A stretch of DNA of 64,000 bases from Rebecca billardiae RCC1528 (GCA_965240325.2 OZ251241.1:992001-1056000); one strand, 5' to 3'. Counted from the stretch's first letter, positions 9,789-58,900 are shown. Program-made: numbers and translations. The notes: generated by a model not told the origin, from the letters alone.

Positions 9789-9999
9789 GGCCGGCGACGA
9801 CGACGCGATCTGTCGATCGCTAATGAGCGCGCGCACGAAACTCCGAAAATGGAAAATACTGGAAAATGGAATTTGCAGCGGCAAAACAAAATGGCGGTCG
9901 TTCAAAACTCAAAAGCTTGCACTGGCGGATCCTCACCTGCTGCTCGGAGCGCGGGCCGCGCGTTAGAGCTTGCCGGCCGCCGCCTCGCCCGCGGGCACG

Positions 10000-11701
10000 A
10001 TGGCGGCGAATGAGGAGTTGCGGCCGATGTTCTGCGACCGGTTCAGCGATTTGGAGGCGATGTACACCGTCGGGCGCAAGCTCGGCGTGGGCAACTTCGC
10101 CAAGGTCGTGCAGGCGAGCACCAACATGGACATGCCTCAGCACGGCCTGAAGGCGGGCGCGCAGGTGGCGATCAAGATCGTCAAGAAGCCGAGCCGCGCG
10201 TCGGTGGACAAGCTCGAGATGCTGCAGGCGGAAATCGACGTGCTCCGCACCATCGAGCACCCCAACCTCGTCCGGCTGTACGAGGTGCATGAGACGGCCG
10301 CGAAGCTGTATCTCGTGATGGAGCTGTGCACGGGCGGCGAGCTCTTCGACAAGATCGTCACGCTGGGCAAGTACACGGAGGAGGACGCGCGCTACTTCAC
10401 GTTCAAGCTGCTCAACGCCGTGCTGTACCTCCACGACAAGAAGATCTGCCACCGCGACCTCAAGCCCGAGAACATCCTGCTCAGCTCGGCGCGCGCCGAC
10501 GCCGAGCTCAAGATCTCCGACTTTGGGCTCAGCCGGATCACGATGGGCAACGGCATGCGCGAGCAGATGCTGCACACGCGGTGCGGCACGCCGGGGTACG
10601 CGGCGCCCGAGGTGCTCGTCTCCGAGCGCGAGACCGGCTCGGGCGGGCGCAACTACGGCCTCGCGTGCGACATGTGGGCGGTCGGCGTGATCACGTACAT
10701 CTTGCTGTGCGCCTCGCCGCCGTTCCACGGCAAGACGGATGCGGAGATGAACGCCAAGGTGAAGCGCGGCGAGTTCGCGTTCCCCGAGCGGTACTGGGGG
10801 CACATCTCGGACTCGGCGAAGGACTTCATCTCCAAGCTCCTCGCCGTCGACCCCGCGAGGCGGCTCACCGCCATGGAGGCGCTGCAGCACGACTGGACGA
10901 CCTCAATCGGCGTGCACACACTCGACCTGCTCGGCCCCGCGTCGCTCTCGCAGGCGGCGTCGGTGCTCACGGCGGACGGGGGCACGGCGAGCTCGACGTT
11001 CCGCGGGCGCATGGGCGCGCTCGCGCGCGAGCGCCGCGCACACCCGGGCCGCGAGCTGCAGGAGCTCCTCGGCCTCCCAGCCGACGAGGAGGTGAGGCGC
11101 GCGCGGACGCGGGCGCGCGCCCGGCGCCGGCGCGCGCGGCGCGTTGTCGGCCGCCGCCGCGCGATCGCGCGATCGCGCCGCGCGCGCCCGCCGCGGCGCG
11201 CTCGGCACGTGCTCGGCCGCCGCCGCGCGATCGACCGCGCGCGCGTGCTCCGCGCGCGAGCGCGGCCGTGCGCCTGCTCAGCGCGGCACCGTGACCCCCG
11301 TTCGCCCGCGCCGCGGCCGGGCGGCGCAGGAGCTCGATCGCTTCCGCTGCACGCACGCGGAGGTGCACGGCGTGCTCCTGATCACGCAGTCCAACGTCGC
11401 GTTCCTCTCGACGACGGAGACGGAGATGGTCGTCCTGCCCGTGCACGCCGTGGTCGCCGTCCGCACCACGCGGTACCAGAAGTGGAACACGCACTCGGAC
11501 AACTCGCTGATGCTCCGGATGGAGAGCGGCAAGACCGAGCAGTTCGACGGCTTCTGGGAGCGCGACGAGTGCCTCAACCTCATCCTCGCAGCGGGACGCT
11601 TCTGTGGGCACACCATCGCGGTGGAGACAGACGGCGAGGACGCGCCGAGCGCGGGCGCCGGCGCTCGCGCGACGCCCTCCAAATCCACGGCCGCGAGCTA
11701 A
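10000..11701 (+). CDS. CAMK-group Ser/Thr protein kinase with C-terminal GRAM (PH-like) domain; exons 10000-11091, 11330-11701
   Basis: LGVGNFAKV, VAIKIVKK, HPNLVRL, MELCTGGELFDKI, HRDLKPEN, DFG, CGTPGYAAPE. After splicing: LLGLPADEEELDRFRC...HGVLLITQSNVAF...FDGFWERDECLNLI, a GRAM-like pattern. Confidence 0.88.
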
Positions 11702-12045
11702 CACAGTCGTCACATGCTGCCGCGGGCGCGGTTACCGAGACGTAACAGGATAGCCGATGCTCGATAGTCGTCGCGCTCGAGTCCACTGCTCGCGACCGGC
11801 AGCGGTGCCTCTCCAGCTCTAGTGGCTCTAGTGAGTAGTGCGCCCTGCCCGCGCATGCCGCCTGTGCGGCTCATCCGACGAGTCATCTGAGTAGTCACTC
11901 TGACTACAAAGTTCGTCCCGCGCGGGACTCGGGTACGGGGTAGTGTCGGGGACCCCTGCAATTTGGCGCCTGCAATCCTGCATCATAGCCGTAGGCTCCG
12001 TGGAAACGTTGGTCGTTTTTCGGGCGGAGGGCGGGAACGAGCATC

Positions 12046-13885: not shown

Positions 13886-14529
13886 ACGACCGGTCGCATC
13901 AATATCAGTGCAACGCGTGTCAGTGCGCTGCATCAGAAGTAGTCACCGGCCGCTTCGTGCGCGTGGCAGCCGCCCGTCAATGCGGCATCGTCCGCTGCTC
14001 CGCCACCGCCACTGGTACACGCTGCGACGATGAGTGACGGTCTGATCGCCGACGCATTCATGACAGTGAGCAGCAGCAGCACGCAAACAATATACGGCCA
14101 AAACGCGTAAAAAGCCCCAAAATAAAACTGCTCCGACGGAATTCTCCCCTGCTTGCTTTTTCACCGGGAGCACCGCCCGGAAAAAAAAGAATCGGTCCAA
14201 AACGATGGCGTCAATGTACCAGGCGCCCCCCCCTCGACCCGCCCCTCGCGCGGCGGCTCTCACTCGCCGCGATGGACGAATCGAGCGACGCCCGGCTGGG
14301 GCTAGGCGGTCCGCTCGGGGGCACGATGTGCACCGCCGCGCATCTCGCCTCCGGCCCTCCGCAGCGTCCGCGGCGAGGCCGCAAAGTGCCTGGAACCACA
14401 TGGAACCACAGGGGGCGTACGGATAGGCGAGCACACCCGGACGTCCCCGTCCGGTGAAGCCAAACACGGGCGCCGGTTGGTCGCTTAGGTGCCGCGCGGC
14501 GCGCTCGGCCCGGTGCGCCCGGCGGCCAC

Positions 14530-16359
14530 ATGGCATTTGTCCAGAAGGCCGTGGCTCGCGCTCGGTCACTCGCCTCGGCGGCCATCGGCCCCGCCACGCT
14601 CTCTGACCTCGTGCGCGCGCTCGAGACGACGCCACGTGATGACGAGGCCATCGTGCGCGCCCTCACGCCGTTCTGCGTTCCGAGGATGGGCCGCAAGCTC
14701 GAAGAGCCCGATGCAATCGAGCGAGGCGGCTCGGTTGCAACCGTTGTGCGCATGCTGGGAGCATCACACGAAGCAAGCGTTCGAGCTGCTGCGGCGGCAG
14801 CTCTCGCGACGGTTGCATCCCAGGTCCCTGGCTGCGTGTCACAGGCTGGCGCGGTGCAGCCCCTCGTGGCCATGCTGCAGACAACCGATGCTGAAGGGAT
14901 GCACAAGGCGGCAGCTCTTGCTCTCTTCTACCTTGCTTACGATCCCCCGCTCCGCGCTCCGATCGCCGAGGCTGGCGCGATCGCACCGCTCGTCGCGCTG
15001 CTGAAGTCCAGCACAGATGCGAAGGCTTGGTGGTATGCAGCGGGTGCTCTCTTCAACCTTGCTTGCGATCCCCCGCTCCGCGCACCGATCGCAGAGGCCG
15101 ACGCGATCTCGCCGCTCGTCGCGCTGCTCACGTCCAGCACAGATGCGTACGCTCTGGGCAATGCAGCGGGTGCTCTCGGCAACCTTGCTTCCGATCCCCC
15201 GCTCCGCGCACCGATCGCCGAGGCTGGCGCGATCACACCGCTCGTCGCGCTGCTGAAGTCCAGCACCGATTCGAGGGCTCTGCGCAATGCAGCGGGTGCT
15301 CTCGGCAACCTCGCCAGGTCAGACTCGCTCTGCGCGCCGATCGTCGAGGCTGGCGCCATCCCTCCGCTCGCTTCAGCGGTGTGCTCATCCTACCGTACCA
15401 CTCGAACACAGGCACAGGGTGTGATCGACGTCCTCGCCAGCTCGGCTGCCGGCCGCGCGGCGGTGGCGAGCAACGAGCAGGCCGTGGGCGCGTTGCTGCG
15501 CCGTGCGCACCAAGACAGCGGGGACGCCTGCATGCAGGCTGCGAAGAAGCTCGTGCGTGACGACGCGTGCTGTGAGCGCGCGCTGGGCTCGGCGGGCGCG
15601 CAGTGCGCTCGGCTGGCGCAGGAAGTCGACGAGCTGCGCGCGTCGCACGAGCAGCTGCTGTCGCAGTCGGCGTTGGTGAGCGAGCCGTCCGCCGCGCGGC
15701 ACAACGTCGTGTTCCGCTGCGCGGACGGCACGCAGCTGGGCGGCAGCCGCGCGCTCCTGATCCACGGCTCGAGCTGCTTTGCGCGGCAGCTGGGCGGCGG
15801 CCTGGCCGAGGGCAGCCGGCGCGAGGTGGACGCCGACCCGGACTTCAGCTCGGCGGCGCACGAGGCGCTGCTGCGCCAGCTGCACGCGGGCGGTCGCGCC
15901 GAGCTGCCCACCGAGCCGGGTCAGGTGCTCGAGCTGCTTCGGCTGGCGTGCAAGCTGCAGCCGCCCGGCGAGGGTGCTGCTGGGAGCGCGCAAGGCACAC
16001 GGCCGTCTGGGCCAGACGCAGCCGATGCGGCCTCTGCGCGCGCTGGCGGTGACCTGCTGGGCCTCGTGGCGGGTCGGTGCGAGGAGGCGGTGCTGGGCGT
16101 GCTGGACGCGGACAACTGCCTGGACATCCTGCGGCACGCGCGCGCGGCGGGAGCTGGCTCTCGAATCAGCGAGGCAGCGCGCGGTGTGGTGAAGGCCAAC
16201 TTGGACGCGATCGTGAGCCAGGAACGTTGGAGTGCGTTCATGCGCGAGGATCTGCTCGAGGCATGCATGCTGATGCAGGCAGTGGCGGTGGACTTCGCTC
16301 ATGCGCATCCACCAGAGGAGCGCGGCGACAGCACGAGCAAGCGGCAGCGCACGTCGTAA
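14530..16359 (+). CDS. Armadillo-repeat + BTB/POZ + BACK-like protein, copy 1 (intronless)
   Basis: Five 42-aa ARM repeats (AGAIxPLVALLKSSTD...AAGALxNLA) starting 14845, 14971, 15097, 15223, 15349. BTB-like HNVVFRCADG...SSCFARQLGGGLAEGSRREV...ALLRQLHAG, BACK-like CEEAVLGVLDADNCLDIL, C-terminal SKRQRT (NLS-like). Confidence 0.88.
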   Translation: MAFVQKAVARARSLASAAIGPATLSDLVRALETTPRDDEAIVRALTPFCVPRMGRKLEEPDAIERGGSVATVVRMLGASHEASVRAAAAAALATVASQVPGCVSQAGAVQPLVAMLQTTDAEGMHKAAALALFYLAYDPPLRAPIAEAGAIAPLVALLKSSTDAKAWWYAAGALFNLACDPPLRAPIAEADAISPLVALLTSSTDAYALGNAAGALGNLASDPPLRAPIAEAGAITPLVALLKSSTDSRALRNAAGALGNLARSDSLCAPIVEAGAIPPLASAVCSSYRTTRTQAQGVIDVLASSAAGRAAVASNEQAVGALLRRAHQDSGDACMQAAKKLVRDDACCERALGSAGAQCARLAQEVDELRASHEQLLSQSALVSEPSAARHNVVFRCADGTQLGGSRALLIHGSSCFARQLGGGLAEGSRREVDADPDFSSAAHEALLRQLHAGGRAELPTEPGQVLELLRLACKLQPPGEGAAGSAQGTRPSGPDAADAASARAGGDLLGLVAGRCEEAVLGVLDADNCLDILRHARAAGAGSRISEAARGVVKANLDAIVSQERWSAFMREDLLEACMLMQAVAVDFAHAHPPEERGDSTSKRQRTS

Positions 16360-17148
16360 GCATCAGAGCGCAGCATCACTGGCGGCGGCGCGGAGCCTCA
16401 TCTGTCATCAGTCAGATCGATGATGTGCGACGATTCTGATTTTAGGTGCGCACTCGTACTATCTTGATGATTCATCTCGTCGCATGATGAGGCTTCCGAT
16501 GCGACGACAATAAATATTGATCGATTATAATATATACGCGTTTCACTGAGGACGATGACCGCGTCGTCGAACGATCACGAGGACGAGGCGGCGTGATGAT
16601 CGTCAGAACGGGCGGTGCCCGGCCCTGGGCGTGCTGACAGTACACCTGACGCAGAGTCGAGAGTGCTCCGCCACCATCAGGCACATCCTGGAGAAAGTTG
16701 TTCACCTAGCTTGGTGCCCACTGCCGCCACACTCCCGTTGTGAACGTCGTCAGTTCCTGTCATCGACCCAGTGCTTCGGCCTTTCGGCTTGTAGCTGCTT
16801 CGGACCTTGATTCGGCTCGGGCACTGACCACCTGCGCGCGGTCCCGGCGGCTGCATCAGCTACTCACTGTCTAGGTAGTGGCATACTGCCAGCGGAAGGG
16901 CTGGGCGGCGAAGGCTTCGCCATGCATCGGTCAGAGAGACGGGCTGCCGTCCTAGAACTCAAGTCCGCCATCGCGCTGCTTCCGTGGAGCGACCGTTCAC
17001 CCATCCGGGCCGGGGAGGGGGTTCCGCCGCCGCCAGGCGACAACGACGACGGTTGGCTGTGCGCCCCATCGTCAGCCCCTCGATCATCGTCGATCGAGAG
17101 CGCTTGTCGTTCGAGCGGCGACGAGCGGCTGCCCACTGCGGCGTCCAC

Positions 17149-18987
17149 ATGACGTGTGTCCAGAAGGCCGTGGTTCGCGCTAGGTCACTCGCCTCGGCGG
17201 CCATCGGCCCCGCCACGCTCTCTGACCTCGTGCGCGCGCTCGAGGCGACGCCACGTGATGACGAGGCCATCGTGAGCGCGCTCACGCCATTCTGCGTTAT
17301 GCCAGGCAGCACAATCGAAGGGCCCGATGCAATCGAGCGAGGCGGCTCGGTCACAACCCTCGCGCGCATGCTGGGAGCATCACGCGAAGCAAGCGTTCGG
17401 GCAGCTGCGGCAGCAGCTCTTGCGATGATTGCGTCCCATATCCCAGGCTGCGTGTCACAGGCTGGCGCGGTGCAGCCCCTCGTGGCCATGCTTCAGACAA
17501 CCGATGCTGAAGGGACGCACACGGAAGCGGTGCGTGCTCTCTACAGCCTTGCTCGCGACCGCTCGCTCCGCGCACCGATCGCCGACGCTGGTGCGATCGC
17601 ACCGCTCGTCGCGCTGCTAAAGTCCAGCACCGATTCGAGGGCTCTGCGCAATGCAGCGAGTGCTCTCTTCAACCTTGCTTGTGATCCCCCGCTCCGCGCA
17701 CCGATCGCCGAGGCTGGCGCGATCACACCGCTCGTCGCGCTGCTCAAGTCCAGCACCGATGCGCGGGCTCTGGGCCATGCAGCGGGTGCTCTCTGCAACC
17801 TTGCTTGCGATCCTTCGCTCCGCGCACCGATCGCCGAGGCTGGCGCGATCGCGCCGCTTGTCGCGCTGCTCGAGTCCAGCACCGATGCGTACACTCTGGG
17901 CAATGCAGCGGGTGCTCTCGCCAACCTCGCCCAGTCAGACTCGCTCCGCGCGCCAATCGTCGAGGCTGGCGCCATCCCTCCGCTCGCTTCAGCGGTGTGC
18001 TCACCCGACCCTACCACTCGAACACGGGCACAGCGTGCGATCGATGCCCTCACCAGCTCGGCCGCCGGCCGCGCGGCGGTGGCGAGCAACGAGCAGGCCG
18101 TGGGCGCGCTGCTGCGTCGTGCGCACCACGACGCCGGCGCGGCGGGCGGGGACGCCTGCATGCAGGCTGCGAAGAAGCTCGTGCGTGACGACGCGTGCTG
18201 TGAGCGCGCGCTGCGCTCGGCGGGCGCGCAGTGCGCCCGGCTGGCGCAGGAGGTGGACGAGCTGCGCGCGTCGCACGAGCAGCTGCTGTCGCAGTCGGCG
18301 TTGGTGAGCGAGCCGTCCGCCGCGCGGCACAACGTCGTGTTCCGCTGCGCGGACGGCACGCAGCTGGGCGGCAGCCGCGCGCTCCTGATCCACGGCTCGA
18401 GCTACTTTGCGCGGCAGCTGGGCGGCGGCCTGGCCGAGGGCAGCCGGCGCGAGGTCGACGCCGACCCTGACTTCAGCTCGGCGGCGCACGAGGCGCTGCT
18501 GCGCCAGCTGCACGCGGGCGGTCGCGCCGAGCTGCCCACCGAGCCGGGTCAGGTGCTCGAGCTGCTTCGGCTGGCGTGCAAGCTGCAGCCGCCCGGCGAG
18601 GGTGCTGCTGGGAGCGCGCAAGGCGCACTGCTTTCTGGGCCAGACGCAGCCGAGGCGGCCTCTGCGCGCGCTGGCGGTGACCTGCTGGGCCTCGTGGCGG
18701 GTCGGTGCGAGGAGGCGGTGCTGGGCGTGCTGGACGCGGACAACTGCCTGGACATCCTGCGGCACGCGCGCGCGGCGGGAGCGGGCTCTCGGATCAGCGA
18801 GGCAGCGCGCGGTGTGGTGAAGGCCAACTTCGAGGCGATTGTGAGCCAGGAACGTTGGAGTGCGTTCATGCGCGAAGATTCGCTCGAGGCGTGCATGCTC
18901 ATGCAAGCTGTGGCCGCGGATTTCGCTCGTGCTCAGTTGTCAGAGCAGCAGCGTGGCGACAGCACGAGCAAGCGGCAGCGCACGTAG
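17149..18987 (+). CDS. Armadillo-repeat + BTB/POZ + BACK-like protein, copy 2 (intronless tandem paralog)
   Basis: Collinear with 14530-16359. ARM repeats start 17461, 17587, 17713, 17839, 17965. BTB/BACK region nearly identical to copy 1. ATG at 17149 aligns with the copy 1 start. Confidence 0.88.
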   Translation: MTCVQKAVVRARSLASAAIGPATLSDLVRALEATPRDDEAIVSALTPFCVMPGSTIEGPDAIERGGSVTTLARMLGASREASVRAAAAAALAMIASHIPGCVSQAGAVQPLVAMLQTTDAEGTHTEAVRALYSLARDRSLRAPIADAGAIAPLVALLKSSTDSRALRNAASALFNLACDPPLRAPIAEAGAITPLVALLKSSTDARALGHAAGALCNLACDPSLRAPIAEAGAIAPLVALLESSTDAYTLGNAAGALANLAQSDSLRAPIVEAGAIPPLASAVCSPDPTTRTRAQRAIDALTSSAAGRAAVASNEQAVGALLRRAHHDAGAAGGDACMQAAKKLVRDDACCERALRSAGAQCARLAQEVDELRASHEQLLSQSALVSEPSAARHNVVFRCADGTQLGGSRALLIHGSSYFARQLGGGLAEGSRREVDADPDFSSAAHEALLRQLHAGGRAELPTEPGQVLELLRLACKLQPPGEGAAGSAQGALLSGPDAAEAASARAGGDLLGLVAGRCEEAVLGVLDADNCLDILRHARAAGAGSRISEAARGVVKANFEAIVSQERWSAFMREDSLEACMLMQAVAADFARAQLSEQQRGDSTSKRQRT

Positions 18988-19031: not shown

Positions 19032-19140
19032 TATCACGGCATCAGAGCGCCCAGCATACTGAAATAAATTATATAAGTCGTATATATATATATATCACGG
19101 CATCAGAGCGCCCAGCATACTGAAATAAATTATATAAGTC

Positions 19141-19211
<71 letters not shown>
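19032..19211. repeat. Two-copy ~61-bp tandem repeat followed by a (TA)n microsatellite (about 19142-19211)
   Basis: tatcacggcatcagagcgcccagcatactgaaataaattatataagtcgtatatata occurs twice, then about 35 TA units. Confidence 0.95.
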
Positions 19212-20084: not shown

Positions 20085-23000
20085 TCATCGTCGCCGGCAC
20101 AACTCCGAGGGCGACGACAGCGACGATGACGACGACGCTGATGAGTCGTCTTGAGCGGCGCCCTCGTCGACGTCGAAGAGTGCAGGAAGCGCCGAGATCG
20201 GCCAGACCAGCGCTCGTGCTTCAGTCCGGACGGCCGCGTGCGCGCGCATGCCGGGCGCCGCTGGCGACTCGCGCTCAAAGCTCACCGCGGTGTACGCGAC
20301 GACGACGTAGTCGAGGCGCGGAGAGAGCGCGAGGGCGCTGCCGAGCGCGTACGGCGCTTGCAGCGGCAGTGGCGCGGACACGGCGCGCACCCGGTGTGGC
20401 GCGGTGGCGCCGAAGGCATAGAGCCGGTGTTGGCGCGCGCACACGCGCGTGCCTGCCACCACACGCGGCGGCGGGTGCGCAGGCCCGAGCGGCTGGCACG
20501 GTCCGCACAGCAGCCCGATCCTCAGAGCGCGCTGCCGCAGCGCGCGCAGCGTGCCGCCGCACACGGACGACTCCGCGATGGCCACCGACGGTGCGCACAT
20601 GCGCCAGCCAGCAAGCGTGCCGGTTGCTCCGCCCTCGTCCGAGCTTTCGCGCTCGCCCGTGTCGTCGGGGCCGCGTGCGGCCGTGAGCGTGGCCAGAGCG
20701 GGCGAGCGCTCACCTCCGGTCGCGCCAACGAGCTCGAGTGGAGCGGCTGCTCGATCGTCCTGGCTGTCGCGCGGGCAGGCGGTGGCCGCGCACGCTCGCG
20801 CGCGCGGCGTGCGCACGCTCAGCACGTGCTGGCGTGCTTCCACGCCGAGCCTGACAAAGCGCAACTGGTCGCGAGCGTGCCCGCTGCCGCACCGTCCCGC
20901 GCGCGCGTCCGCCTCCGTGCACGCAAATGGCTGCCAGCTGGGCGCGCTCGCCCTCGCGAGGGCGGCGGGCGCAGAGCCCGGCGCCGGAGGGAGCGACCGC
21001 GCCACCTCGTCGCACGCGGAGACTGTGACGCCGAGCGGGCCGCCGGGCGCCCACGGCTGCATGCACAGCTGCACCAGCCGAGGGTGCGCGTGCCGCGCGG
21101 GCTGCGCGCCGTCGCCGCCCGCGCACGCGGCCGCGGCCCCGTCGGCGGCGCAGTCGCACGCTCCGATCCACGCGTGCAGCATAGCACGCTGCGACGGCGG
21201 CTGCGCCCAGGGCGGCTCCGGCGGTGCCAGCGCGGGCTGCTGCCTCGGAGCTGCATCCTGGGCAGCCGCCCGGGCCGCGGCCGAATCGGCGGGCTGCCCC
21301 TCCTCCAGATCGGGGGATGGCTGATCTGCAGATGGCTGATCTGGAGATTGCATCTCGATGACGGCGGGCGCGGGCTCCGGTGCCAGTGGCCGCTGGGGCG
21401 AGCCACCGCCGTCGTCCGGCACGACGGCGCGGGGCGGGGCCCGCGCGCGGTGCCGGCTGAGACCGCCGCGCGCGACCGCCGTCGGCCGAGGCACGATCGG
21501 CTCCGGCGGCGGCCGGCGGCGCAGCTCGCGCCGACGAGGCCGACCCTGGCCGGAGCGCTCGGCGCTGTCGCCCGCCGCGCCGCGCGCCGTCGACGGCATC
21601 GGCGCGCCCAGCTGAACCAGCTGGAGGGCGCCATCGTCGCCTGACGCCGCTCGGAGCAGCGCGCGCCACGCGAGCGGCGCGGCGGCGTCTGCGACGCCCG
21701 AGAGCGCCGGATCCCCCTCCTCCTCCTCCTCCGCTGCGGACGACGCAGCTGCCCTCGACTCCTCACCCAGGGTTGTACCCGTGTCCTCACCCAGATTTGT
21801 TCCACTGTCGCGGCCTCCGCGACCGTCTCGCGCTGGCGGCGCGCCGGCGCACGCGAGCCCAAAGGAGCCGGCGGTGCAGCATGGCTGCCACGCTGCCTCC
21901 TCCTCCTCTGCGCTGCGATTGCCGCTGGCCGACCCGCCAAGGGTCAGCGCGCCTGTGCCCGCGGCTCCGGCTGCCGCCGCGCGGCCGTTGTTGCCGCGCC
22001 GCAGCGGCGCCATTCGGACCGCGCTCGTCAGCTCGTGCGCTGCCAACCGCCCGACCACCCAGCGCGGCAACCCGAGCCCGTCGGGAGCGGCAGCCGCGGC
22101 GTCGGCCGGTGCGCACAGGGCACTCAGTAGCCAGCCGCCCTCCGCCCACACCAGGCTCGGCGCGGCACACGCCGGCGCACCACCGAGCGCCGGCGCCGAC
22201 GCTGCGCCTGCGAGCGCGGCGCGCGGCGCCAGCCTCACGTCTGCCGCGTCGGGCGCGGCGGCGGCGGCGGCGGTGTGCGCGGCGGCGGCAATCGGCGTCC
22301 GCAGAAGCACCACGCGCCCGAGGGCTGCGCGCTCGGGCCGCTCGAGCCCGGGGGCTCCCTCCGACACGGCCGAGTGCCGTGCGCACGGCACAGTGGCAGG
22401 CAGCGCAAGCGCACACAGCAGCAGCAGCACGGCGAGCGGCGCGCGCGCGCCCGCGCGCGCCCACGCCGCGCGCAGCGGCTCTTGCACGGCGGTGACGCCG
22501 AGCGCCGCCGCGGCACAGAGCACCGCACCGGCGTGCACGTCGAAGCGCGCCCAGACCGCGCCCACCGCCGGCTGCAGCAGCAGCTGCAGTAGCCACAGCC
22601 GCCCCAGCGCCGTCAGACGAGCGGGCGCGGCGGCGCCGAGCGCGCGCAGGCACGGATCCGACCCGTGGGCCGCGCCGACGAGCGCGACGCCCGCGAGCGG
22701 CGACAGCGCGCCGAAGCGGACAGCGAGCACGCGCACCCGCGACTGCGGCGGTGGCACGGCGCAGACAAGTGCGCACAGCGCCGCGCACGCCGCGCTCGGC
22801 CCGTAGCAAAGCACGCTGGACAACGCCGCTGGCGGCATCGGGCAGAGCGCGCGCCGGCTGTCCACGCCGACGCTCAGGCGGCGGCCGCCCTGGCCAACCA
22901 GAGCGGCCGCCGCCGCGCCCAGCAAGAACTGCGCGGCGTACGCCGCGCAGTGAGCCCACACGACGGCCGCGTAGCCCCAGCTGCCGTCGACTGCGTCGAT

Positions 23001-26000
23001 GAATGCCGGGTGGAGCGCGGCCGCGGCGGCGTGCGCGCGCGCGGCCGCGGCGGCAGCCACAGCGCACGAGTCGTCTTGCTCGACGCACGCCGCGCCCGGG
23101 CCCAGCCGCGCGCGCCGCCCGGAGGCTGCTGCGGAGGCGAGGGCCGCAGCGCGCGAGCCAGCGGCGCGCGGCCGTGCGATGGCGGCGCTCAGCGCGGCGA
23201 GCGCCCAGGGCACAGCCGCCGCGGCCGCGAGCAGCACCGCGGCGCGCTCGGCGCGCGAGCCCGCGGCGCCCACCTGCGCGAGAGCGCGCGCGCGCAGCAG
23301 CTGCCACAGTGCGCCGCACAGCGGCAGGCAGGCTAGGAACCACGCATGGGCCAGCGCGCCGCGCGCGGCCTCGGACGGGGCGAGGAGAGGAGCGAGCCAG
23401 AGCGCACGCAGGGCGCGCGCCAAGGCCGGCCCCGCCTCGGCGCACGGCGCGACGCAGGCCGCCACGCCCGTGGCGAGTGCGTAGGTGCACCAGCTGTTGG
23501 CGAGCGCGCCCGCTGCGGCGCCGGGCGCGCCCACCGCGGCACTGGCTGCGCGCAGCGCTTCTCGAGCCCAGGGCAGCGGCGCTGCCCAGGCAGCAGAGCG
23601 AGGGGACTGCGGCGAGGCACGCGAGCGCGAGGCGGCGCCACCGCTGGCGTGCATCACCGGCGTGAGCTCCTGGAGACCCTCCTCCTCCTCCTCCTCCTCC
23701 TCCTCCTCCTCCTCCCCCTCGCCATCATCATCATCACCCGGCGACTGCTGCTGCTGCGGCTGCCGTGGCCGCGGCTGCTGTGGCTGCGGCGGCGCCTCGT
23801 CCGCCTGCTTCCGTGCGCCCTCCTCCGCCGCGGCCTCCGCGCCCACCACCTCCGCATCCAACGCCCCAGCGCCCCTCGGCTCAAGCTCAAGCTCCACAGC
23901 TCGCGCCTCGAGCGCCCCGACGCCGCCGCCGGCCGCAAGCTCGCGCCGCGCGCTCAAGGCAGGCCGAGAGGCATCAGCCAAGGGCCTGGCGGCGTGCTGC
24001 TGCTTCGTGGCAGCCGCGGGCGTGAGGCCAGCCACTGCCGAGCGCCAAGCCACGCTGAAGCCCGCGGAGAGGAAAAGAATAGGCACCCACAGCCCGCCCC
24101 ACGCGCTCGCCCGATCAGTGAGGCCGCGCAGCCAGCCACCGCCCTCGCCGCCAGCCAGGATCGGCGCGGGGCCAGCCGTGCCGCCAAGGCCGAGGCCAAA
24201 CGCCAGGTGCGAGCTCGCCGCGAAGCGCAGGAGCGACAGCGCCACCAAAGCCGGCGTGGCGGCCGCGGCGCCAGCCGAGGACGACAGCGAGGGCGTGCCT
24301 TCCGCGTCGCCTCGCGCCGCGCCGGCCGCGCGCTGCCCGGTCGCCCACAGGGCACAGCCCAGCCAGCACGCCGCCGAGAGAAGATTCCGGAAGTTTCCGC
24401 TGGCCTCGTACCACTTCGGCGGCGGCGGCGGCGGCGGCGGCGCGGGCGGCGCGGGCGGCGCGCCGTGCGCGCGGCGCGCCTCCTCGAGGAGCGCATCCGC
24501 GAGTGCCTCCTCGCCCACCAGCTCGCGCAGCGCCTCAGGCGCCCCCGGTGCCGAGACATATCTCGCCGCGGCGAGGAGCTCCGCCAGCTGTGGGTCATCT
24601 GGCGGCGCGCGCGCTGACGACAGCGGCAGCGTGAGCTGGACGTCGACTTCACACCGCGCGGCCACGACGCGCTGCCACGGGCACGGCGGCGGCCTGCGCG
24701 GGCTGGTGGCCGCGGCGGCCGCCGAGGCCGGCGCGCCGGCGCCGCTCGCGCCGCCGCCGCGCGCGCCGCTCGCCGCCGCGCACGCGTGCCTCCGGAAGCA
24801 GAGCGGAGCGAACCGAGCAGTCTCTGCGCACTCCGCTGTGGCCGCGACCGCCGAGGCGGCGGCTCCGAGCAGCTCGCTCCCAGCGCTGCCGGCATCGGCG
24901 GCAGAAGCGTCGGCGCCAAAGGCCGCGTGGACGCCCGTCGGCGCAGGGCTGGCGGCAGCGCCGGAGCCAGCAGCGTCACCAATCGCTGCAAGGCCCCCCA
25001 GACTGCGCTCGGTCGTGGCCGCGGCCGCGGCGCGCCGAACAGTGGAGCGAGCGCACACCGGCGCAAGGAGAAGCTGCGCGCGCCACGTGGACACCAGCGC
25101 CGACCAGTACGGCCCGATCGCCTCGTCCCGGCCCTCCGTAGACGCGAGCATCGCGTCCGTCAGCCCTCGGCCGTTGAGCGCCTCCAGGCTCGGAGGCGGC
25201 GGCGGCGCCACTGTCCCCTCTGCCTCATCGTCCGCTGGCGCCTCGCCGCTTCGCGTGCCGTTGGGCAGCGCGCGCGCCGCGACGAGCCAGAGCGCGCGGC
25301 GGATCGCGGCGGCGGGGTCGGGCGCGACGGAGGGCTCGTGCCCGACGAGGCAGTGCGCGCCCGCCACCTCGCACTCGCGCCGCAGCGCCCGGAAGAGCGG
25401 CGGAAGCGCAGAGCCGAACGCCTTGGCCATGGGCGATGCCATCGCGCGCGCGTCCGCGCCCGTGCGCCGCCGCATGCGCGAGAGCTCGGCGCTCCGGCAC
25501 TCGCGCACGTCGAGGGCGCACGCCGCATACGCGTGCGCGCCCAGCTCCACGTACGCCACCCTCCGCGCCGCGCCCGCCTGGCGCTCGGCGCCGTCCGCGC
25601 CGCCGGCCAGCCCGGAGCGTTGTGATCTGTCCCCCAGCGCGACTCCCGTTTGCAGGAGCTGCTGCGCGTCGCCCGGGAAGGGCGCGGCGAGGTAGCTGAC
25701 GCGTGCGACGGCGTGCGAGACGACGGGTGCGCCGAGCAGCTCGCGCATCCTCGCCACCGTCTCCCCGGCAAGGGCTCCCGTCTCGTGCTCGCGCCTGAGC
25801 AGCCCTTTCGGAAGCACCGCCGCGCGGCTCAGCTCAGCGCGCATGGCGCGCGGCGAGACCACAAAGTCCGCGGCCGAGGCGGACAGCTGGGTGGAGATAC
25901 GCGCGTGCTCGCCGGCCGAGCCGCTCATCGCCTGCACCAGCGCGAGCGTCATGTGCAGCGCGGGCTCGGCGCCGACGACCACGAGATGCACGCCCGCAAG

Positions 26001-26246
26001 GCAGTCGAGAATCTCCGGCCGAGAGAAGATGTGGTAGTGGCACTCGGCGCCCGCCGGCGAGACGGCCGCTGTCCCCGGCGCGTACGTGAGGGAGCCGTTG
26101 CTCGCAGAGCAGCGCGGCGTGCACGCCGCGCCGGGCGCATGACCGGCACCGGCCACAAGTGCAGCGACGACAATGGCGCACGGCACCGCCGCCATCGTGG
26201 CGTTCTGAGTTGCGAGTTTCTTTTTCGACCGCTGCGCCCTTTTCAT
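20085..26246 (-). CDS. Giant (~2050 aa) secretory-pathway membrane protein: degenerate SGNH/PC-esterase-like domain, acyltransferase-3-like TM domain, C-terminal luminal domain
   Basis: Single long ORF with a signal-like MAAVPCAIVVAALVAGAG (alternative ATG at 26195). CHYHIFSRPEILDCLAGVHLVVVGAE resembles C..f....cL.gk.i.fvGDS. LSLLRFAASSH, WGGLWVPILFLSAGF and HAWFLAC resemble AT3 motifs. Contains a poly-E tract. Confidence 0.6.
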   Translation of the reverse strand: MKRAQRSKKKLATQNATMAAVPCAIVVAALVAGAGHAPGAACTPRCSASNGSLTYAPGTAAVSPAGAECHYHIFSRPEILDCLAGVHLVVVGAEPALHMTLALVQAMSGSAGEHARISTQLSASAADFVVSPRAMRAELSRAAVLPKGLLRREHETGALAGETVARMRELLGAPVVSHAVARVSYLAAPFPGDAQQLLQTGVALGDRSQRSGLAGGADGAERQAGAARRVAYVELGAHAYAACALDVRECRSAELSRMRRRTGADARAMASPMAKAFGSALPPLFRALRRECEVAGAHCLVGHEPSVAPDPAAAIRRALWLVAARALPNGTRSGEAPADDEAEGTVAPPPPPSLEALNGRGLTDAMLASTEGRDEAIGPYWSALVSTWRAQLLLAPVCARSTVRRAAAAATTERSLGGLAAIGDAAGSGAAASPAPTGVHAAFGADASAADAGSAGSELLGAAASAVAATAECAETARFAPLCFRRHACAAASGARGGGASGAGAPASAAAAATSPRRPPPCPWQRVVAARCEVDVQLTLPLSSARAPPDDPQLAELLAAARYVSAPGAPEALRELVGEEALADALLEEARRAHGAPPAPPAPPPPPPPPKWYEASGNFRNLLSAACWLGCALWATGQRAAGAARGDAEGTPSLSSSAGAAAATPALVALSLLRFAASSHLAFGLGLGGTAGPAPILAGGEGGGWLRGLTDRASAWGGLWVPILFLSAGFSVAWRSAVAGLTPAAATKQQHAARPLADASRPALSARRELAAGGGVGALEARAVELELEPRGAGALDAEVVGAEAAAEEGARKQADEAPPQPQQPRPRQPQQQQSPGDDDDGEGEEEEEEEEEEEEGLQELTPVMHASGGAASRSRASPQSPRSAAWAAPLPWAREALRAASAAVGAPGAAAGALANSWCTYALATGVAACVAPCAEAGPALARALRALWLAPLLAPSEAARGALAHAWFLACLPLCGALWQLLRARALAQVGAAGSRAERAAVLLAAAAAVPWALAALSAAIARPRAAGSRAAALASAAASGRRARLGPGAACVEQDDSCAVAAAAAARAHAAAAALHPAFIDAVDGSWGYAAVVWAHCAAYAAQFLLGAAAAALVGQGGRRLSVGVDSRRALCPMPPAALSSVLCYGPSAACAALCALVCAVPPPQSRVRVLAVRFGALSPLAGVALVGAAHGSDPCLRALGAAAPARLTALGRLWLLQLLLQPAVGAVWARFDVHAGAVLCAAAALGVTAVQEPLRAAWARAGARAPLAVLLLLCALALPATVPCARHSAVSEGAPGLERPERAALGRVVLLRTPIAAAAHTAAAAAAPDAADVRLAPRAALAGAASAPALGGAPACAAPSLVWAEGGWLLSALCAPADAAAAAPDGLGLPRWVVGRLAAHELTSAVRMAPLRRGNNGRAAAAGAAGTGALTLGGSASGNRSAEEEEAAWQPCCTAGSFGLACAGAPPARDGRGGRDSGTNLGEDTGTTLGEESRAAASSAAEEEEEGDPALSGVADAAAPLAWRALLRAASGDDGALQLVQLGAPMPSTARGAAGDSAERSGQGRPRRRELRRRPPPEPIVPRPTAVARGGLSRHRARAPPRAVVPDDGGGSPQRPLAPEPAPAVIEMQSPDQPSADQPSPDLEEGQPADSAAARAAAQDAAPRQQPALAPPEPPWAQPPSQRAMLHAWIGACDCAADGAAAACAGGDGAQPARHAHPRLVQLCMQPWAPGGPLGVTVSACDEVARSLPPAPGSAPAALARASAPSWQPFACTEADARAGRCGSGHARDQLRFVRLGVEARQHVLSVRTPRARACAATACPRDSQDDRAAAPLELVGATGGERSPALATLTAARGPDDTGERESSDEGGATGTLAGWRMCAPSVAIAESSVCGGTLRALRQRALRIGLLCGPCQPLGPAHPPPRVVAGTRVCARQHRLYAFGATAPHRVRAVSAPLPLQAPYALGSALALSPRLDYVVVAYTAVSFERESPAAPGMRAHAAVRTEARALVWPISALPALFDVDEGAAQDDSSASSSSSLSSPSELCRRR

Positions 26247-30296: not shown

Positions 30297-33200
30297 TCAT
30301 TGCCGCGACACCGATGGCGGCTGCTGCAGGCGCACGAGCCGCTCGAGGAGCTGTTCGTTCTCGCGCCGAATCAGGTCCTGCACGTCAGCATAGATGGTCG
30401 AGCGCATTGCGCCGAGCTCTTTGCGCAGCTCCTGCTTCACGGACGCCATCTCGTGCTGCGTCCATGGGGAGGGGTGCGCCGCGCGTGTCAGCGCCGACCG
30501 GCGCGGCGCGCCGCGCGAGCGCACGCGCGCGCAGCGCACACCCGCATGAGGTTCAGCTGGCCCGTCCACTCGACTCCGTTGGCGCCATCCGCGTCCGAGT
30601 CGGTCACTACTTCGAGCACGTGCGTCCACGCCAGGCTCTGCTCGCGATGCGCCGCGAATCGGCCGGACGAGTTGTAGTACTCTGCATCGCGCGCGCGCAG
30701 CGCACCGGCGCCATGGTCCGCATGGGGCGTGGGCGACGGTGGGTGCGACGAGCCGCGGCGGCGCGCGCCGCGCGGGCGGAGCGCGGGGAGCGGGCCGCAC
30801 CGACGATGAGGAGCGCGTGCAGCCGCAGCGTCTGCTCCGCCTGCTGCTCCTGCACCTGCGCGTACGAGTCGCCGAGCAGCGCGATCAGCGCGTTGAGCGC
30901 CACCACGCCGACCACGAGCATGAACGCGAAGAAGAGCACCTTGGCGAGGCTGGGCTCGGCCGCCTCCTCGAAGACGGCGAGGTCAAAGTCGGCGAACATC
31001 CCCATCTTCGCCGTGGAGATGAGCGCGGCCTTGAGCGTCTCGAAGCCGGTGGGCACGCTCGCGTCGCCGCCCGGCCAGCCGGCGTGCGCGCCGGCGGCGC
31101 TCGTCGGCATCGAGCTCGGCATCTCGGCCGCCGGCGCGCGGTGCGCGCTCTCGACGCCGCCGGGCTCGAGCGAGAGCTCGAGCGCGGCCAGGTTGCCGCC
31201 GAAGAGCATCACGAACGCGACGGCGAAGAAGAGCGTGAGCAGCAGCAGGATAAGCAGGAAGCCGGTCATGTCCTTAAAGTTTTGAATCAGCACCATCACC
31301 CGCCAGCCCGTCACGCGGAAGCCGCGCAGCACCTGCACGCAGCGCACGAGCAGGAGGACGGAGGCGAGCGCGATCAGCATGCGCACGCCGAGCATGCTCA
31401 GCCCGTTCACCGCCTCGAGGCACACCGCCGCCGCGGGCACCGCGATGCCGAAGACGTCGAGCACGTTCCACGCGGACATGGCGTACTGCGCAACCCCCGG
31501 CAAGAGCCCGTGCTGCAGCACGATGCCGTGGAACTGGAGCACCTCGTTGCGCAGCATCACGCCGGCGAAGGCGAGGAGGAGGAGGGCCGCGACGCTCATG
31601 TACACGCCGTTCGCGCCCACCGCGTCGGTGCTCGCCACCGCGCGCTCGAGCTGCCCCAGCGTGCGGTACCCGTCGGCGACGCGCGTCGCATAGAAGACGA
31701 AAACGACCGCGTGCGCGAGCAGCGTGCACGTTTTCTGCACGTGCAGCGCGTAGAAGTGGCGGCTCCAGAGCGCGCCGATGGTGGCGTGCATGCACGGGTT
31801 GTCGAAGGTGCCGCTGTGCGGCACCTGGCCCAGCGCCTGCAGCGCCGCGCGCGAGGAGAGGTACGGCACGGGCACGCGCTTCGGGAGCACCTCGACGCCG
31901 ACGCGACGCTTGGCCGCGGCGCTGCCGCGATCGCCGCCGACGCCGCCGACGCCGCCGCCCTCGGTCGCGCTCAGCGCGACGGCCGCGAGCGCGCTGGCGC
32001 CGAGCGCTCGCCAGAGCGCGCGCGCCGCGCGCGCTGCACTGAGCGCGAGCGCCAGGCTCGCGGGCGGCACGACCGACGCGATCCGCGCCTGCCAGCCCTC
32101 GGCGTCCGTGGCGGGCGCTCCGCCCGCGCCGAGCGCGCGGCCGGTGCTCGCGCCGCGCGCGAGCAAGCCGGCGGCGGCCTCGCGCGCCTTCCGAGGGTCG
32201 TGGTCGAGCTCGAGCCAGATGCGCGTGCCGGCGCCGCCCCAGGTCGGGTGCAGAGCCGAGGTCATGCGCTCGAGAGGGTCGCCGGCCGCGTTGCACGCGT
32301 ACTTGATCGGCGAGGCCGAGGGCTCGAGCTGCATCTGCTTGAGGAAGGCACACACGGCCGAGCCCATCTTGAGGCGGACGATCCGCGGGATGAGATTGGT
32401 GGCGATGGCCGAGCGCCGGGGCAGCGGGCCGCGGGCCGCGGCGATGAGCAGCAGCCGCAGCGTGCGCACGTCGCGCAGCCGGATCGCCACCTCGAACGAC
32501 GGCGACTCGAGCCCCGCGGCGGGCAGGGTGGCGAGCGAGGGCAGCGCAGCCAGGATCCGCTCGACCGCGCCGCGCTCTGCGCGAGAGACAAGAACATCCA
32601 TTAGCCGCGCACGCCCGTGCGCCTCGCCCACGCCGAGCGGCTGGAGGGACTCGTCGTGCTCGGGCATGCAGTTGATGGCGACTGCCGGGTGCTGCCGGAG
32701 CAGCTCGGTGACCGTGCGCGCGCGCTCGCCCGCGAACGCGCTGCGCGCCGCCGGGTCGCGCACACGCAGCAGCAGCGCGGGGTCGACCGGCGTGCTGAGC
32801 GACATGGGCGCCGCACTGCACCGGTACGCGCACAGCGCCTGGTTGCCGTCGGCGAGGGTGAGGCCGTCCGCCGAGAAGCACAGGTGCACGGGCCAGTACG
32901 AGCGCTCCCCGCAGCGGTGGATCACCAGGCCCGACTCGACGTGGAGCACGCTCACCGTCTTGTCGTGCGCGCCGATCGCGAGCGTCGCGTCGTCGGGCGA
33001 GAAGCGCAGGCCCATCACCCAGCCGACAGTCGAGTGCGTGTGCGTGGCCTCGAGGGTGGGCGCGTCGAAGATCGCGAGCACGCCGTTCCCGCCGGCCGCA
33101 AGGTGGCGCCCGCTGTGCGAGGCGGCGAGCGCCTGCACGCGCTTGCCGCCGACCTCGATGATCGCGCGGGTGAGCTCGCTCCGCGCGCGCGGCTCGTCAC

Positions 33201-58746: not shown

Positions 58747-58900
58747 GGCACGATCGCGGACGGGTCGGATCCGAGCTGATCAGCCAGAGTTGGACACAGT
58801 TTGGCATCAGCTACTAGTAGTAATTCCGATGCCGATGGCACGATCGCGGACGGGTCGGATCCGAGCTGATCAGCCAGTTGGACATTTGGCAGCTAGTTGT
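58747..58900. repeat. Two-copy direct repeat with 90-bp spacing
   Basis: ggcacgatcgcggacgggtcggatccgagctgatcagccag at 58747 and 58837. Confidence 0.92.

What the first reader, a model, noticed from the sequence alone, without database searches (positions are those of the whole stretch)
14530..18987. Tandem ARM-BTB genes with hypervariable, shuffled 126-bp repeats: candidate diversifying recognition / Cullin3-adaptor system
Seen: two intronless paralogs with near-identical BTB/BACK halves, while differences concentrate in the ARM array. Each 42-aa repeat has a fixed scaffold (AGAIxPLVALLxSSTD...AAxALxNLA.D..LRAPIAE) with variable positions: AKAWWY, AYALGN, SRALRN, ARALGH, AYTLGN; FY/FN/GN/YS/CN/AN; AY/AC/AS/AR/AQ. 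Modules have changed position between copies. A 39-nt block (KSSTDSRALRNAA) is identical in copy-1 repeat 4 (15256-15294) and copy-2 repeat 2 (17620-17658). The DAY(A/T)LGNAAGAL block is copy-1 repeat 3 and copy-2 repeat 4 (1 mismatch in 36 nt). AITP is repeat 4 versus repeat 3. Established: ARM helix 3 lines the peptide-binding groove, BTB-BACK proteins are CUL3 substrate adaptors, and fungal HET/NLR and Ectocarpus LRR/TPR receptors diversify by repeat shuffling. Inference: repeat exchange generates new substrate specificities for a nuclear (SKRQRT) ubiquitin-ligase adaptor, possibly targeting viral or other foreign proteins in an alga.
Basis: partly seen in the sequence, partly recalled or inferred. 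Interest (0 to 1): 0.85.

Follow-up and report, generated by a model that had tools for sequence, protein, structure and literature searches.

The report
Tandem ARM-BTB ubiquitin-adaptor paralogs
Two neighbouring genes in a haptophyte alga encode armadillo-repeat proteins with a BTB-BACK tail, the build of a Cullin-3 substrate adaptor. They differ mainly at the residues that line the ligand groove, which fits ordinary paralog divergence with gene conversion and gives no evidence of an immune-like diversifying system.

Summary
Two intact same-strand ORFs (14530-16359 and 17149-18987) are 86% identical in protein and 91% in DNA. Each has four consensus-like 126-bp ARM units plus a degenerate fifth. 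The 39-nt identical block, the 36-nt block with one mismatch and the AITP swap are all real.

The C-terminal half is a divergent BTB plus 3-box/BACK module. A family profile hits SPOP at 1.7e-9, and Foldseek's top hits are all CUL3 adaptors.

DNA homology stops exactly at the CDS ends. Synonymous divergence is uneven along the gene (0.157, 0.054, 0.393). So the near-identical BTB half partly reflects recent gene conversion, not only constraint.

Within the array, 18 of 28 helix-3 groove positions differ between the copies, against 16 of 140 elsewhere (P=1.4e-8). Groove omega is about 1.6-2.3, which this small sample cannot separate cleanly from 1.

Short H2 and H3 patches have moved between repeat positions (permutation P=0.0004). 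Positional orthology and repeat number are otherwise conserved.

I found only two copies. I found no viral link, no strain data and no close relatives.

Verdict: a lineage-specific member of the known ARM-BTB adaptor kind, with paralog divergence in specificity. The claim of a diversifying defence system is unsupported.

The parts
14530..16359 (+). Copy 1 CDS, 609 aa: N-terminal ARM/HEAT-like helices, ARM R1-R5, coiled coil, BTB, low-complexity insert, 3-box/BACK, basic tail
   Evidence: ORF; Pfam Arm E=2.4e-32 and ARM_ARMC5 84 bits; AF2 helices
17149..18987 (+). Copy 2 CDS, 612 aa from the ATG homologous to the copy 1 start. The listed ORF runs upstream to a GTG at 16984, but homology begins at 17139
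   Evidence: both ATGs are preceded by CCAC
14845..15348 (+). Copy 1 ARM units R1-R4 (4 x 126 bp; R2-R4 are 79-87% identical to each other)
15349..15474 (+). Copy 1 degenerate fifth ARM unit (capping repeat), 92% identical to its copy 2 counterpart
17461..17964 (+). Copy 2 ARM units R1-R4
17965..18090 (+). Copy 2 degenerate fifth ARM unit
15256..15294 (+). 39-nt patch (end of H2 plus H3 N-terminus, KSSTDSRALRNAA) in copy 1 R4, identical to copy 2 R2 at 17620-17658
17620..17658 (+). Partner of the 39-nt patch, in copy 2 R2. The rest of this unit is closest to copy 1 R2
15142..15177 (+). 36-nt patch DAYALGNAAGAL in copy 1 R3; 1 mismatch to copy 2 R4 at 17884-17919
17884..17919 (+). Partner patch DAYTLGNAAGAL in copy 2 R4
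15568..15666 (+). Copy 1 long helix (aa 347-379), a probable coiled coil preceding the BTB
   Evidence: AF2 secondary structure
15682..16305 (+). Copy 1 BTB, about 40-aa low-complexity insert, then 3-box/BACK-like helices (aa about 385-592)
   Evidence: profile A1 versus PDB: SPOP 1.7e-9; AF2 pLDDT 81.6; Foldseek SPOP/KBTBD2/KLHL11
18310..18933 (+). Copy 2 BTB / insert / 3-box-BACK (aligned to the copy 1 region)
   Evidence: Pfam BTB E=0.013
16360..17148 (.). Intergenic spacer with no detectable similarity to the sequence upstream of copy 1 or downstream of copy 2
   Evidence: local alignment z from -0.04 to 2.1, against z=261 for the CDS

Best explanation
These are two tandem paralogs of a small ARM / coiled-coil / BTB / 3-box-BACK family whose named relatives are haptophyte. 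They most likely act as Cullin-3-type substrate adaptors.

**Proposed mechanism**
- The BTB-BACK tail dimerises and docks on the cullin (inferred).
- The ARM superhelix binds an extended peptide in the groove lined by helix 3 (inferred from homology).

**Proposed evolution**
- The pair is old, because the flanks are unalignable and the last 49 codons have pS of about 0.39.
- The coding sequence is kept similar by interlocus gene conversion, most recently across codons about 256-560 (inferred from the dS pattern).
- Within the array the scaffold is homogenised among R2-R4 of both genes.
- The pocket residues on the Asn-ladder face of H3 stay different.
- Short conversion tracts of 21-45 nt have carried H2 and H3 patches between repeat positions (shown as a mosaic; the mechanism is inferred).

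**Net effect:** two adaptors with a common ligase-docking half and different substrate-binding grooves.
For: **Architecture**
- Pfam Arm E=1e-32 and 1e-36.
- The ARM region hits consensus and designed ARM proteins and Vac8, E=1e-39 to 1e-26.
- The C-terminal half has 26 relatives at E<=1e-3, 29-46% identical; of the 10 longer ones scanned, 7 carry N-terminal ARM repeats.
- A 601-aa relative is colinear over 513 aa.
- Family profile against PDB: SPOP 1.7e-9, then KBTBD2, KLHL11, KLHL3.
- 13 of 20 family members match Pfam BTB, best E=5e-7.
- The AF2 model (pLDDT 81.6) gives Foldseek top hits that are all CUL3 adaptors, probability 1.00.
- L-A-E aligns with the L-K-E of KLHL22 and the M-E-E of SPOP.

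**Conversion**
- Homology is confined to 14520-16354 versus 17139-18985; flanks give z of about 0-2.
- pS is 0.157, 0.054 and 0.393 in three segments (Fisher P=5.5e-4 and 7.8e-7).

**Groove divergence**
- 18/28 versus 16/140 amino-acid differences (P=1.4e-8).
- Groove dN 0.57 and dS 0.26, against dN 0.063 and dS 0.156 elsewhere.
- Minimum changes are 13 nonsynonymous: 2 synonymous in the groove, against 13:13 elsewhere.

**Mosaic**
- 46 incompatible site pairs.
- At nt 46-66, c2R2 equals c1R4 and c1R3 is close to c2R4, while nt 88-126 groups by repeat position.
- The shared AGG Arg codon and a shared synonymous G at site 15 favour common descent over convergence.

**Groove assignment**
- The Asn ladder binds the peptide backbone (PMC6838082).
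- Pocket residues are 29, 30 and 33 of designed ARM repeats (PMC11228518).
- These were mapped onto the units through the alignment.
Against: - CUL3 binding and any substrate are untested, and some BTB proteins do not bind cullins.
- Alone, the window proteins miss Pfam's BTB gathering score (16.1 and 13.9 bits, against 20.5).
- The most common residue at the hydrophobic position of the family's phi-x-E motif is Thr, which is not hydrophobic.
- Groove omega above 1 rests on very few synonymous sites, and patch transfers make the differences non-independent. Relaxed constraint is therefore not excluded.
- dS in a genome with about 70% G+C (GC3 78% in these genes) may understate neutral divergence. 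That weakens the argument from flank divergence, though it does not explain the threefold to sevenfold dS heterogeneity.
- No transcript evidence exists for either gene.
Confidence: 0.6

Rival explanations
1. One reading: a dedicated diversifying recognition system. Repeat shuffling continually generates new specificities for an adaptor aimed at viral or other foreign proteins, as in fungal HET/NLR repeat receptors.
For: - R2-R4 units are 76-90% identical in DNA, while groove codons differ.
- Patch exchange is statistically supported.
- Groove omega is 1.6-2.3.
Against: - Only two copies in 64 kb.
- Both have the same repeat number, and positional orthology dominates.
- No close relatives in 5.8 billion proteins, in metagenome contigs or in viral contigs.
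- The closest named relative is a single-copy gene without ARM.
- No strain data.
- The ARM-region omega is 0.73.
Confidence: 0.1
2. Neutral decay or relaxed constraint. After duplication one copy is redundant. The solvent-exposed groove residues drift, and ectopic conversion between similar repeats scrambles them without functional consequence.
For: - Groove omega is not clearly above 1.
- Exposed positions are the least constrained in any repeat protein.
- Overall omega is 0.54.
Against: - Both ORFs are intact over more than 609 codons.
- Non-groove ARM positions have omega 0.40, and the C-terminal part 0.30.
- Exposed H1 and H2 positions are almost invariant, while one face of H3 changes.
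- The Asn ladder is kept in R2-R4 of both copies.
- Groove differences persist although conversion homogenises the rest.
Confidence: 0.17
3. The BTB-BACK half serves only for oligomerisation or for another partner. The proteins are then ARM scaffolds, not ubiquitin-ligase adaptors.
For: - The BTB is divergent and below Pfam's cutoff when scored alone.
- The hydrophobic position of the cullin-contact motif is poorly conserved across the family.
- The nearest relative lacks a substrate-binding domain.
Against: - The best sequence and fold matches are BTB-3-box-BACK proteins, nearly all of them known CUL3 adaptors, rather than BTB-ZF or T1 domains.
- 3-box/BACK helices are present.
- The Glu of the motif is present in 15 of the 19 aligned members.
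Confidence: 0.1
4. The swapped patches are assembly chimeras between 85-91% identical repeats and gene copies.
For: Repeats and paralogs of this similarity are prone to mis-assembly. No reads are available to check.
Against: - Unique, unrelated flanks and 146 mismatches spread along the whole CDS argue for two real loci.
- Each patch carries private differences at its borders.
Confidence: 0.03

Closest known systems
ARMC5 (animal ARM-BTB substrate adaptor of CUL3; targets RPB1 and SREBF; PMC9226510, PMC9462479)
   Same: - N-terminal ARM array plus C-terminal BTB.
- Pfam ARM_ARMC5 is matched above its gathering score (84 and 85.4 bits, against 79.9).
- The expected role is the same: ARM binds the substrate and BTB binds CUL3.
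   Different: - No orthology is shown. In the precomputed Pfam annotations, ARM_ARMC5 is also listed for all 120 hits shown, most of which carry no BTB.
- The BTB-BACK half belongs to a separate small family whose named relatives are haptophyte.
- The repeats here are consensus-like and near-identical.
- The gene is tandemly duplicated.
Plant ARIA / ABAP1 (Armadillo-BTB Arabidopsis proteins; PMC7903899)
   Same: ARM-BTB domain order.
   Different: The BTB of P0003, an ARM protein with a canonical Pfam BTB match, relates only weakly to this family's profile (hhalign probability 26%, E=7e-4). Common descent of the fusion is therefore unproven.
SPOP / KLHL / KBTBD BTB-3-box-BACK adaptors
   Same: - Best profile and fold matches.
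- Both a phi-x-E-like motif and a helical extension after the BTB are present.
   Different: - The substrate domain is ARM, not MATH or Kelch, and lies N-terminal to the BTB.
- A low-complexity insert of about 40 aa sits between the BTB and the BACK helices.
- The BACK part is short.
Designed consensus armadillo repeat proteins (dArmRP; PMC11228518, PMC6838082)
   Same: - The best PDB sequence hit is an engineered consensus ARM protein (E=9.6e-40).
- The scaffold is near-identical from unit to unit, with differences at the H3 pocket positions (dArmRP 26, 29, 30, 33, 36, 40) around a fixed Asn ladder.
   Different: - This is a natural protein with only three near-identical units plus divergent end units.
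- The ligand is unknown.
Repeat receptors with hypervariable sites in near-identical repeats (fungal HET/NLR WD40/ANK/TPR arrays; from my own knowledge)
   Same: - High DNA identity between repeats.
- Variation focused on the binding face.
- Exchange between repeats.
   Different: - No repeat-number variation.
- No large paralog family was seen.
- There is no NLR or death-domain context.
- Only sub-repeat patches have moved.

Membership tests
Armadillo repeat proteins (Pfam PF00514) | Tandem units of about 42 aa, each with three helices, matching the Arm profile | tested here: met
   Arm E=2.4e-32 and 1.2e-36 with 4-5 stretches. The AF2 model shows a regular H1-H2-H3 pattern with block-mean pLDDT of 82-98 over aa 131-280. 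PDB hits are ARM proteins.
Armadillo repeat proteins (peptide-binding type) | Conserved Asn on helix 3 (Asn ladder) facing the groove | tested here: met
   N at unit position 29 in R2-R4 of both copies aligns with the ladder Asn of consensus ARM proteins (PMC6838082). In R1 it is replaced by Y or S.
BTB/POZ domain | Sequence match to the Pfam BTB profile above its gathering score | tested here: not met
   16.1 bits (copy 2) and 13.9 bits (copy 1 C-terminal half), against a cutoff of 20.5.
BTB/POZ domain | BTB fold and profile-level homology | tested here: met
   Family profile against PDB: SPOP 1.7e-9, KBTBD2 1.9e-8, KLHL11 5.7e-7. 13 of 20 relatives match Pfam BTB, best E=5e-7. Foldseek probability is 1.00 to SPOP, KBTBD2, KLHL11, A55 and KEAP1.
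CUL3 substrate adaptors (BTB-3-box-BACK) | Helical 3-box/BACK extension after the BTB | tested here: met
   Profile positions 163-249 align to SPOP 275-360. The model has helices at residues 180-263 of the 280-aa query with pLDDT of about 90. Fold matches cover the BTB-BACK of KLHL11.
CUL3 substrate adaptors (BTB-3-box-BACK) | phi-x-E cullin-contact motif in the BTB (definition from my own knowledge of KLHL11/SPOP-CUL3 structures) | tested here: inconclusive
   The window proteins have L-A-E aligned to L-K-E of KLHL22 and M-E-E of SPOP. Across the family the first position is most often T, while the E is present in 15 of 19 aligned members.
CUL3 substrate adaptors (BTB-3-box-BACK) | Physical binding to CUL3 and substrate ubiquitylation | not testable with these tools
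   Needs co-IP or in vitro assays. No cullin gene was identified among the ten largest ORFs scanned; the rest of the window was not searched.
ARMC5 orthologs | Specific ARMC5-type ARM region plus BTB, with orthology to animal ARMC5 | tested here: inconclusive
   ARM_ARMC5 scores 84 and 85.4 bits, against a cutoff of 79.9. The same model is listed for all 120 hits shown, most without a BTB. No ARMC5 sequence was available for a direct comparison.
Hypervariable-repeat recognition families (HET/NLR-like diversifying repeats) | Near-identical repeats at DNA level with variation confined to binding positions | tested here: met
   R2-R4 units are 76-90% identical. Groove pN is 0.45 against 0.09 elsewhere.
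Hypervariable-repeat recognition families (HET/NLR-like diversifying repeats) | Repeat-number variation and whole-repeat reshuffling between paralogs or alleles | tested here: not met
   Both copies have the same five units in the same order, and on-diagonal identity is the highest or tied highest for every unit. Only 21-45-nt patches differ in position.
Hypervariable-repeat recognition families (HET/NLR-like diversifying repeats) | Positive selection (omega significantly above 1) at binding positions | tested here: inconclusive
   Groove omega is about 2.2 pairwise and about 1.6-2.0 by minimum-change counts. Fisher against the pooled synonymous rate gives P=0.02 for six units, but the events are not independent.
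Hypervariable-repeat recognition families (HET/NLR-like diversifying repeats) | Large paralog family and/or strain polymorphism | not testable with these tools
   Only 64 kb of this genome is available. It holds two copies, and no close relatives were found in any collection.

The most novel reading that the evidence does not exclude
The two genes are the visible tip of a genome-wide, fast-evolving set of ARM-BTB adaptors in this haptophyte. Near-identical ARM modules would carry interchangeable pocket residues, a natural counterpart of designed modular peptide binders. Gene conversion would re-assort those pockets to create new degron specificities, perhaps against viral proteins.
Probability: 0.08. 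Interest if true: 0.7.

Novelty: new member of a known kind. Interest (0 to 1): 0.3.

Why it matters
If the reading is right, this is a clean natural example of how a cullin adaptor pair can keep a shared ligase-docking half by gene conversion while the substrate groove diverges.

The ARM modules are so consensus-like that pocket residues can be read off directly. That makes the pair a convenient test case for ARM peptide-recognition rules, and it gives an entry point into haptophyte ubiquitin biology, which is hardly studied.

It does not currently open a new kind of system. ARM-BTB adaptors, tandem paralog divergence and concerted evolution of repeats are all well known.

Tried and rejected
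- **Close relatives or other copies.** The word-indexed protein search gave only ARM hits at 29-54% identity. With the C-terminal region alone it found nothing. Exact look-ups of both proteins found nothing on record. Metagenome contigs gave nothing by peptide pattern or by repeat DNA pattern. Viral contigs gave nothing. tblastn of the window found only the two copies. A family-level dN/dS or per-repeat tree across strains was therefore impossible.
- **Structure of full-length copy 1.** A single-sequence AF2 run modelled the ARM array well but left the C-terminal half below pLDDT 50. It was redone with the family alignment.
- **Solvent accessibility.** Model coordinates are not exposed to scripts, so accessibility of the variable residues could not be computed. 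I used helical periodicity and alignment to designed ARM proteins instead.
- **False duplication or haplotig.** Rejected, because the flanks are unrelated.
- **Retrocopy.** Rejected, because homology stops at the start and stop codons, with no UTR or poly-A trace.
- **Convergent evolution of the SRALRN patch.** Judged less likely than conversion, because all 39 nt are identical, including the AGG codon where another unit uses CGG for Arg.
- **Literature numbering.** A search for explicit dArmRP residue numbers (N37, W33, E30) in PMC10684580 found nothing. The numbering offset therefore rests partly on my own knowledge.

Full report
**Observation**

The window is eukaryotic nuclear DNA of about 70% G+C. 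Two long ORFs lie on the + strand, at 14530-16359 (609 aa) and 16984-18987. The second aligns with the first from its ATG at 17149, giving 612 aa.

The proteins are 86% identical. The DNA is 91% identical over 14520-16354 versus 17139-18985. Tandem Repeats Finder reports a 126-bp period with 3.6 copies in each gene.

Cutting the arrays at AGAI gives five 42-aa units per gene. R1 is divergent, R2-R4 are 76-90% identical to one another in DNA, and R5 is a degenerate cap.

- The 39-nt block at 15256-15294 equals 17620-17658.
- The 36-nt DAY(A/T)LGNAAGAL block has one mismatch.
- AGAITP is in R4 of one copy and R3 of the other.
- The variable residues and the SKRQRT tail are as listed.

**What the proteins are**

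The N-terminal 330 residues are armadillo repeats. Pfam Arm scores E=2.4e-32 and 1.2e-36. The best PDB hit is an engineered consensus ARM protein at 9.6e-40, followed by Vac8. The AF2 model shows regular three-helix units with block-mean pLDDT of 82-98 for aa 131-280.

The C-terminal half alone is only marginal for BTB. Pfam gives E=0.013 and 0.06, below the gathering score. The word-indexed search found nothing for it.

The exhaustive representative search found 26 relatives at E<=1e-3, 29-46% identical. The best cluster includes Diacronema lutheri KAG8461085. Of the ten longer relatives scanned, seven carry N-terminal ARM repeats. One of 601 aa is colinear with copy 1 over 513 residues.

A profile of 20 family members (A1) hits SPOP at 1.7e-9. 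It then hits KBTBD2, KLHL11 and KLHL3, covering both the BTB core and the helices after it.

AF2 with this alignment gives pLDDT 81.6. Its Foldseek matches are SPOP, KBTBD2, KLHL11, KBTBD4, vaccinia A55 and KEAP1, all at probability 1.00.

The window proteins carry L-A-E where KLHL22 has L-K-E and SPOP has M-E-E. This is the cullin-contact motif as I know it from published BTB-CUL3 structures.

The architecture is therefore ARM, coiled coil, BTB, a low-complexity insert, then 3-box/BACK. The reading as a CUL3-type adaptor is well founded as homology but untested as function.

**Organism and neighbourhood**

Neighbouring ORFs encode a CaMK-like kinase, a WD40-ion-channel fusion, PIP5K, GH3, GT61 and GSIII.

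The kinase is 79-80% identical to MMETSP/JGI transcripts. It is 63% identical to Prymnesium parvum and 54% to Diacronema lutheri. The source is therefore a haptophyte whose own proteins are not in the collections.

That explains why no near-identical proteins or contigs were found. It also means that the question of paralog number in the genome cannot be answered here. In D. lutheri the closest relative is a single-copy coiled-coil-BTB-BACK gene without ARM.

**How the pair evolves**

Homology begins about 10 nt before the ATG and ends at the stop codon. Sequence upstream, downstream and in the spacer gives alignment scores no better than shuffles (z from -0.04 to 2.1, against z=261 for the CDS). 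This rules out a haplotig artefact and a retrocopy.

Synonymous divergence is strongly uneven:

| Codons | pS |
|---|---|
| 1-255 | 0.157 |
| 256-560 | 0.054 |
| 561-609 | 0.393 |

Fisher tests against the middle segment give P=5.5e-4 and 7.8e-7.

Taken together, an old duplication whose coding sequence is repeatedly homogenised by interlocus gene conversion is the most economical account (inference). It follows that the near-identical BTB/BACK half is not purely a sign of stronger constraint. It has also been converted more recently.

**The ARM array**

Between the copies the array has dS 0.167, dN 0.122 and omega 0.73. The C-terminal part has dS 0.10, dN 0.03 and omega 0.30.

The amino-acid differences are not spread evenly. 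I fixed the groove positions from designed ARM proteins: Asn ladder at 37, pocket residues 26, 29, 30, 33, 36 and 40. The ladder and positions 29, 30 and 33 come from PMC6838082 and PMC11228518. The remaining positions and the offset of 8 come from my own knowledge plus the alignment.

With that set, 18 of 28 groove positions differ between the copies, against 16 of 140 elsewhere (P=1.4e-8).

Pairwise estimates are dN 0.57 and dS 0.26 at groove codons, against dN 0.063 and dS 0.156 elsewhere. Minimum-change counts over the six central units are 13 nonsynonymous to 2 synonymous in the groove, against 13 to 13 elsewhere (P=0.023).

Exposed H1 and H2 positions hardly vary, and the ladder Asn is kept in R2-R4.

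However, omega above 1 rests on about 4-16 synonymous sites and on non-independent events. Positive selection is suggested, not demonstrated.

**Shuffling**

Whole units keep their positions, with on-diagonal identity of 85-92%. Segments within a unit have conflicting nearest neighbours:
- At nt 46-66, c2R2 equals c1R4 (0 differences) and c1R3 is close to c2R4 (1 difference).
- At nt 1-45, c1R4 is close to c2R3 (1 difference).
- nt 88-126 groups strictly by repeat position.

Of 231 informative-site pairs, 46 fail the four-gamete test. The c2R2/c1R4 run has permutation P=0.0004, and the PHI-type statistic was reached by none of 5000 permutations.

Identical codon choice, such as AGG for Arg where c2R3 uses CGG, and a shared synonymous state favour transfer over convergence.

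This is short-tract ectopic conversion among similar repeats. It is real, but it is the normal behaviour of such arrays. I found no change in repeat number and no relocation of whole modules.

**Comparison with known systems**

ARM-BTB adaptors are known: ARMC5 in animals (PMC9226510, PMC9462479) and ARIA/ABAP1 in plants (PMC7903899).

The ARM_ARMC5 model is passed, but it is unspecific, since all 120 hits listed carry it and most have no BTB. The family's BTB profile relates only weakly to the BTB of P0003, an ARM protein with a canonical Pfam BTB match (hhalign probability 26%). Common origin of the fusion is therefore open.

The pair shares two features with hypervariable-repeat receptors: near-identical repeats with binding-site variation, and patch exchange. 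It lacks repeat-number variation, a visible paralog family and any defence context. No relative was found in viral contigs.

**Verdict**

The biochemical reading as an ARM-BTB cullin adaptor is well supported as homology. The groove-focused divergence and patch exchange are real.

The step to a diversifying, possibly antiviral recognition system has no support in the available data. The best account is an ordinary but neat case of paralog specialisation under concerted evolution, in a lineage-specific branch of a known adaptor type.

Interest is modest (0.3). It would rise if a genome-wide or strain-level census showed many variable copies.

Noticed in passing
window 20085-26246 (-): A single 2053-aa ATG ORF in 76-79% G+C DNA with no Pfam match. 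It is Ala/Pro-rich with hydrophobic stretches. By my estimate of stop-codon frequency at this G+C it is far too long to be a chance ORF, so it is probably a real lineage-specific gene.
   Followed up: no
window 19032-19211: An exact 61-bp direct duplication (19032-19156) runs into a (TA)35 microsatellite (19142-19211) about 45 nt downstream of the copy 2 stop codon.
   Followed up: no
window 30610-34899 (-): One 1430-aa ORF joins WD40 beta-propellers (aa about 140-690) to an Ion_trans channel domain (aa 1107-1353). This is an unusual fusion if it is a single gene.
   Followed up: no
window 9970-11742 (+): A CaMK-like kinase ORF. It is 79-80% identical to MMETSP/JGI transcripts, 63% to Prymnesium parvum and 54% to Diacronema lutheri. 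This places the window in a haptophyte that is absent from the protein collections.
   Followed up: partly
L001 8001-8900 (Diacronema lutheri JAGTXO010000028.1): The closest named relative of the C-terminal half is a 299-aa coiled-coil plus BTB-BACK protein without ARM repeats. It is single-copy, lies between RPL13 and ODAD1-like genes, and keeps the same context in three assemblies.
   Followed up: partly
alignment A1, last columns; window 16339-16356 and 18970-18984: A basic tail at or near the C-terminus, K/R-R-x-R/K-x-S, recurs in about half of the family (KRQRTS, KRPRAS, KRGRIS, RRARLA, KRARES and others). This suggests a conserved signal such as an NLS. Copy 2 ends one codon earlier, with TAG where copy 1 has TCG.
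   Followed up: no
P0033 (Chrysochromulina tobinii) and P0130: Other haptophyte-type ARM proteins show the same pattern of near-identical 42-aa units that differ at the same helix-3 positions. P0033 is an ARM-U-box protein and P0130 an ARM-BTB protein. The pattern may therefore be a general property of ARM expansions in these algae and not special to this locus.
   Followed up: no
window 58000-62000: G+C drops to 60-61% from a window average of about 70%.
   Followed up: no
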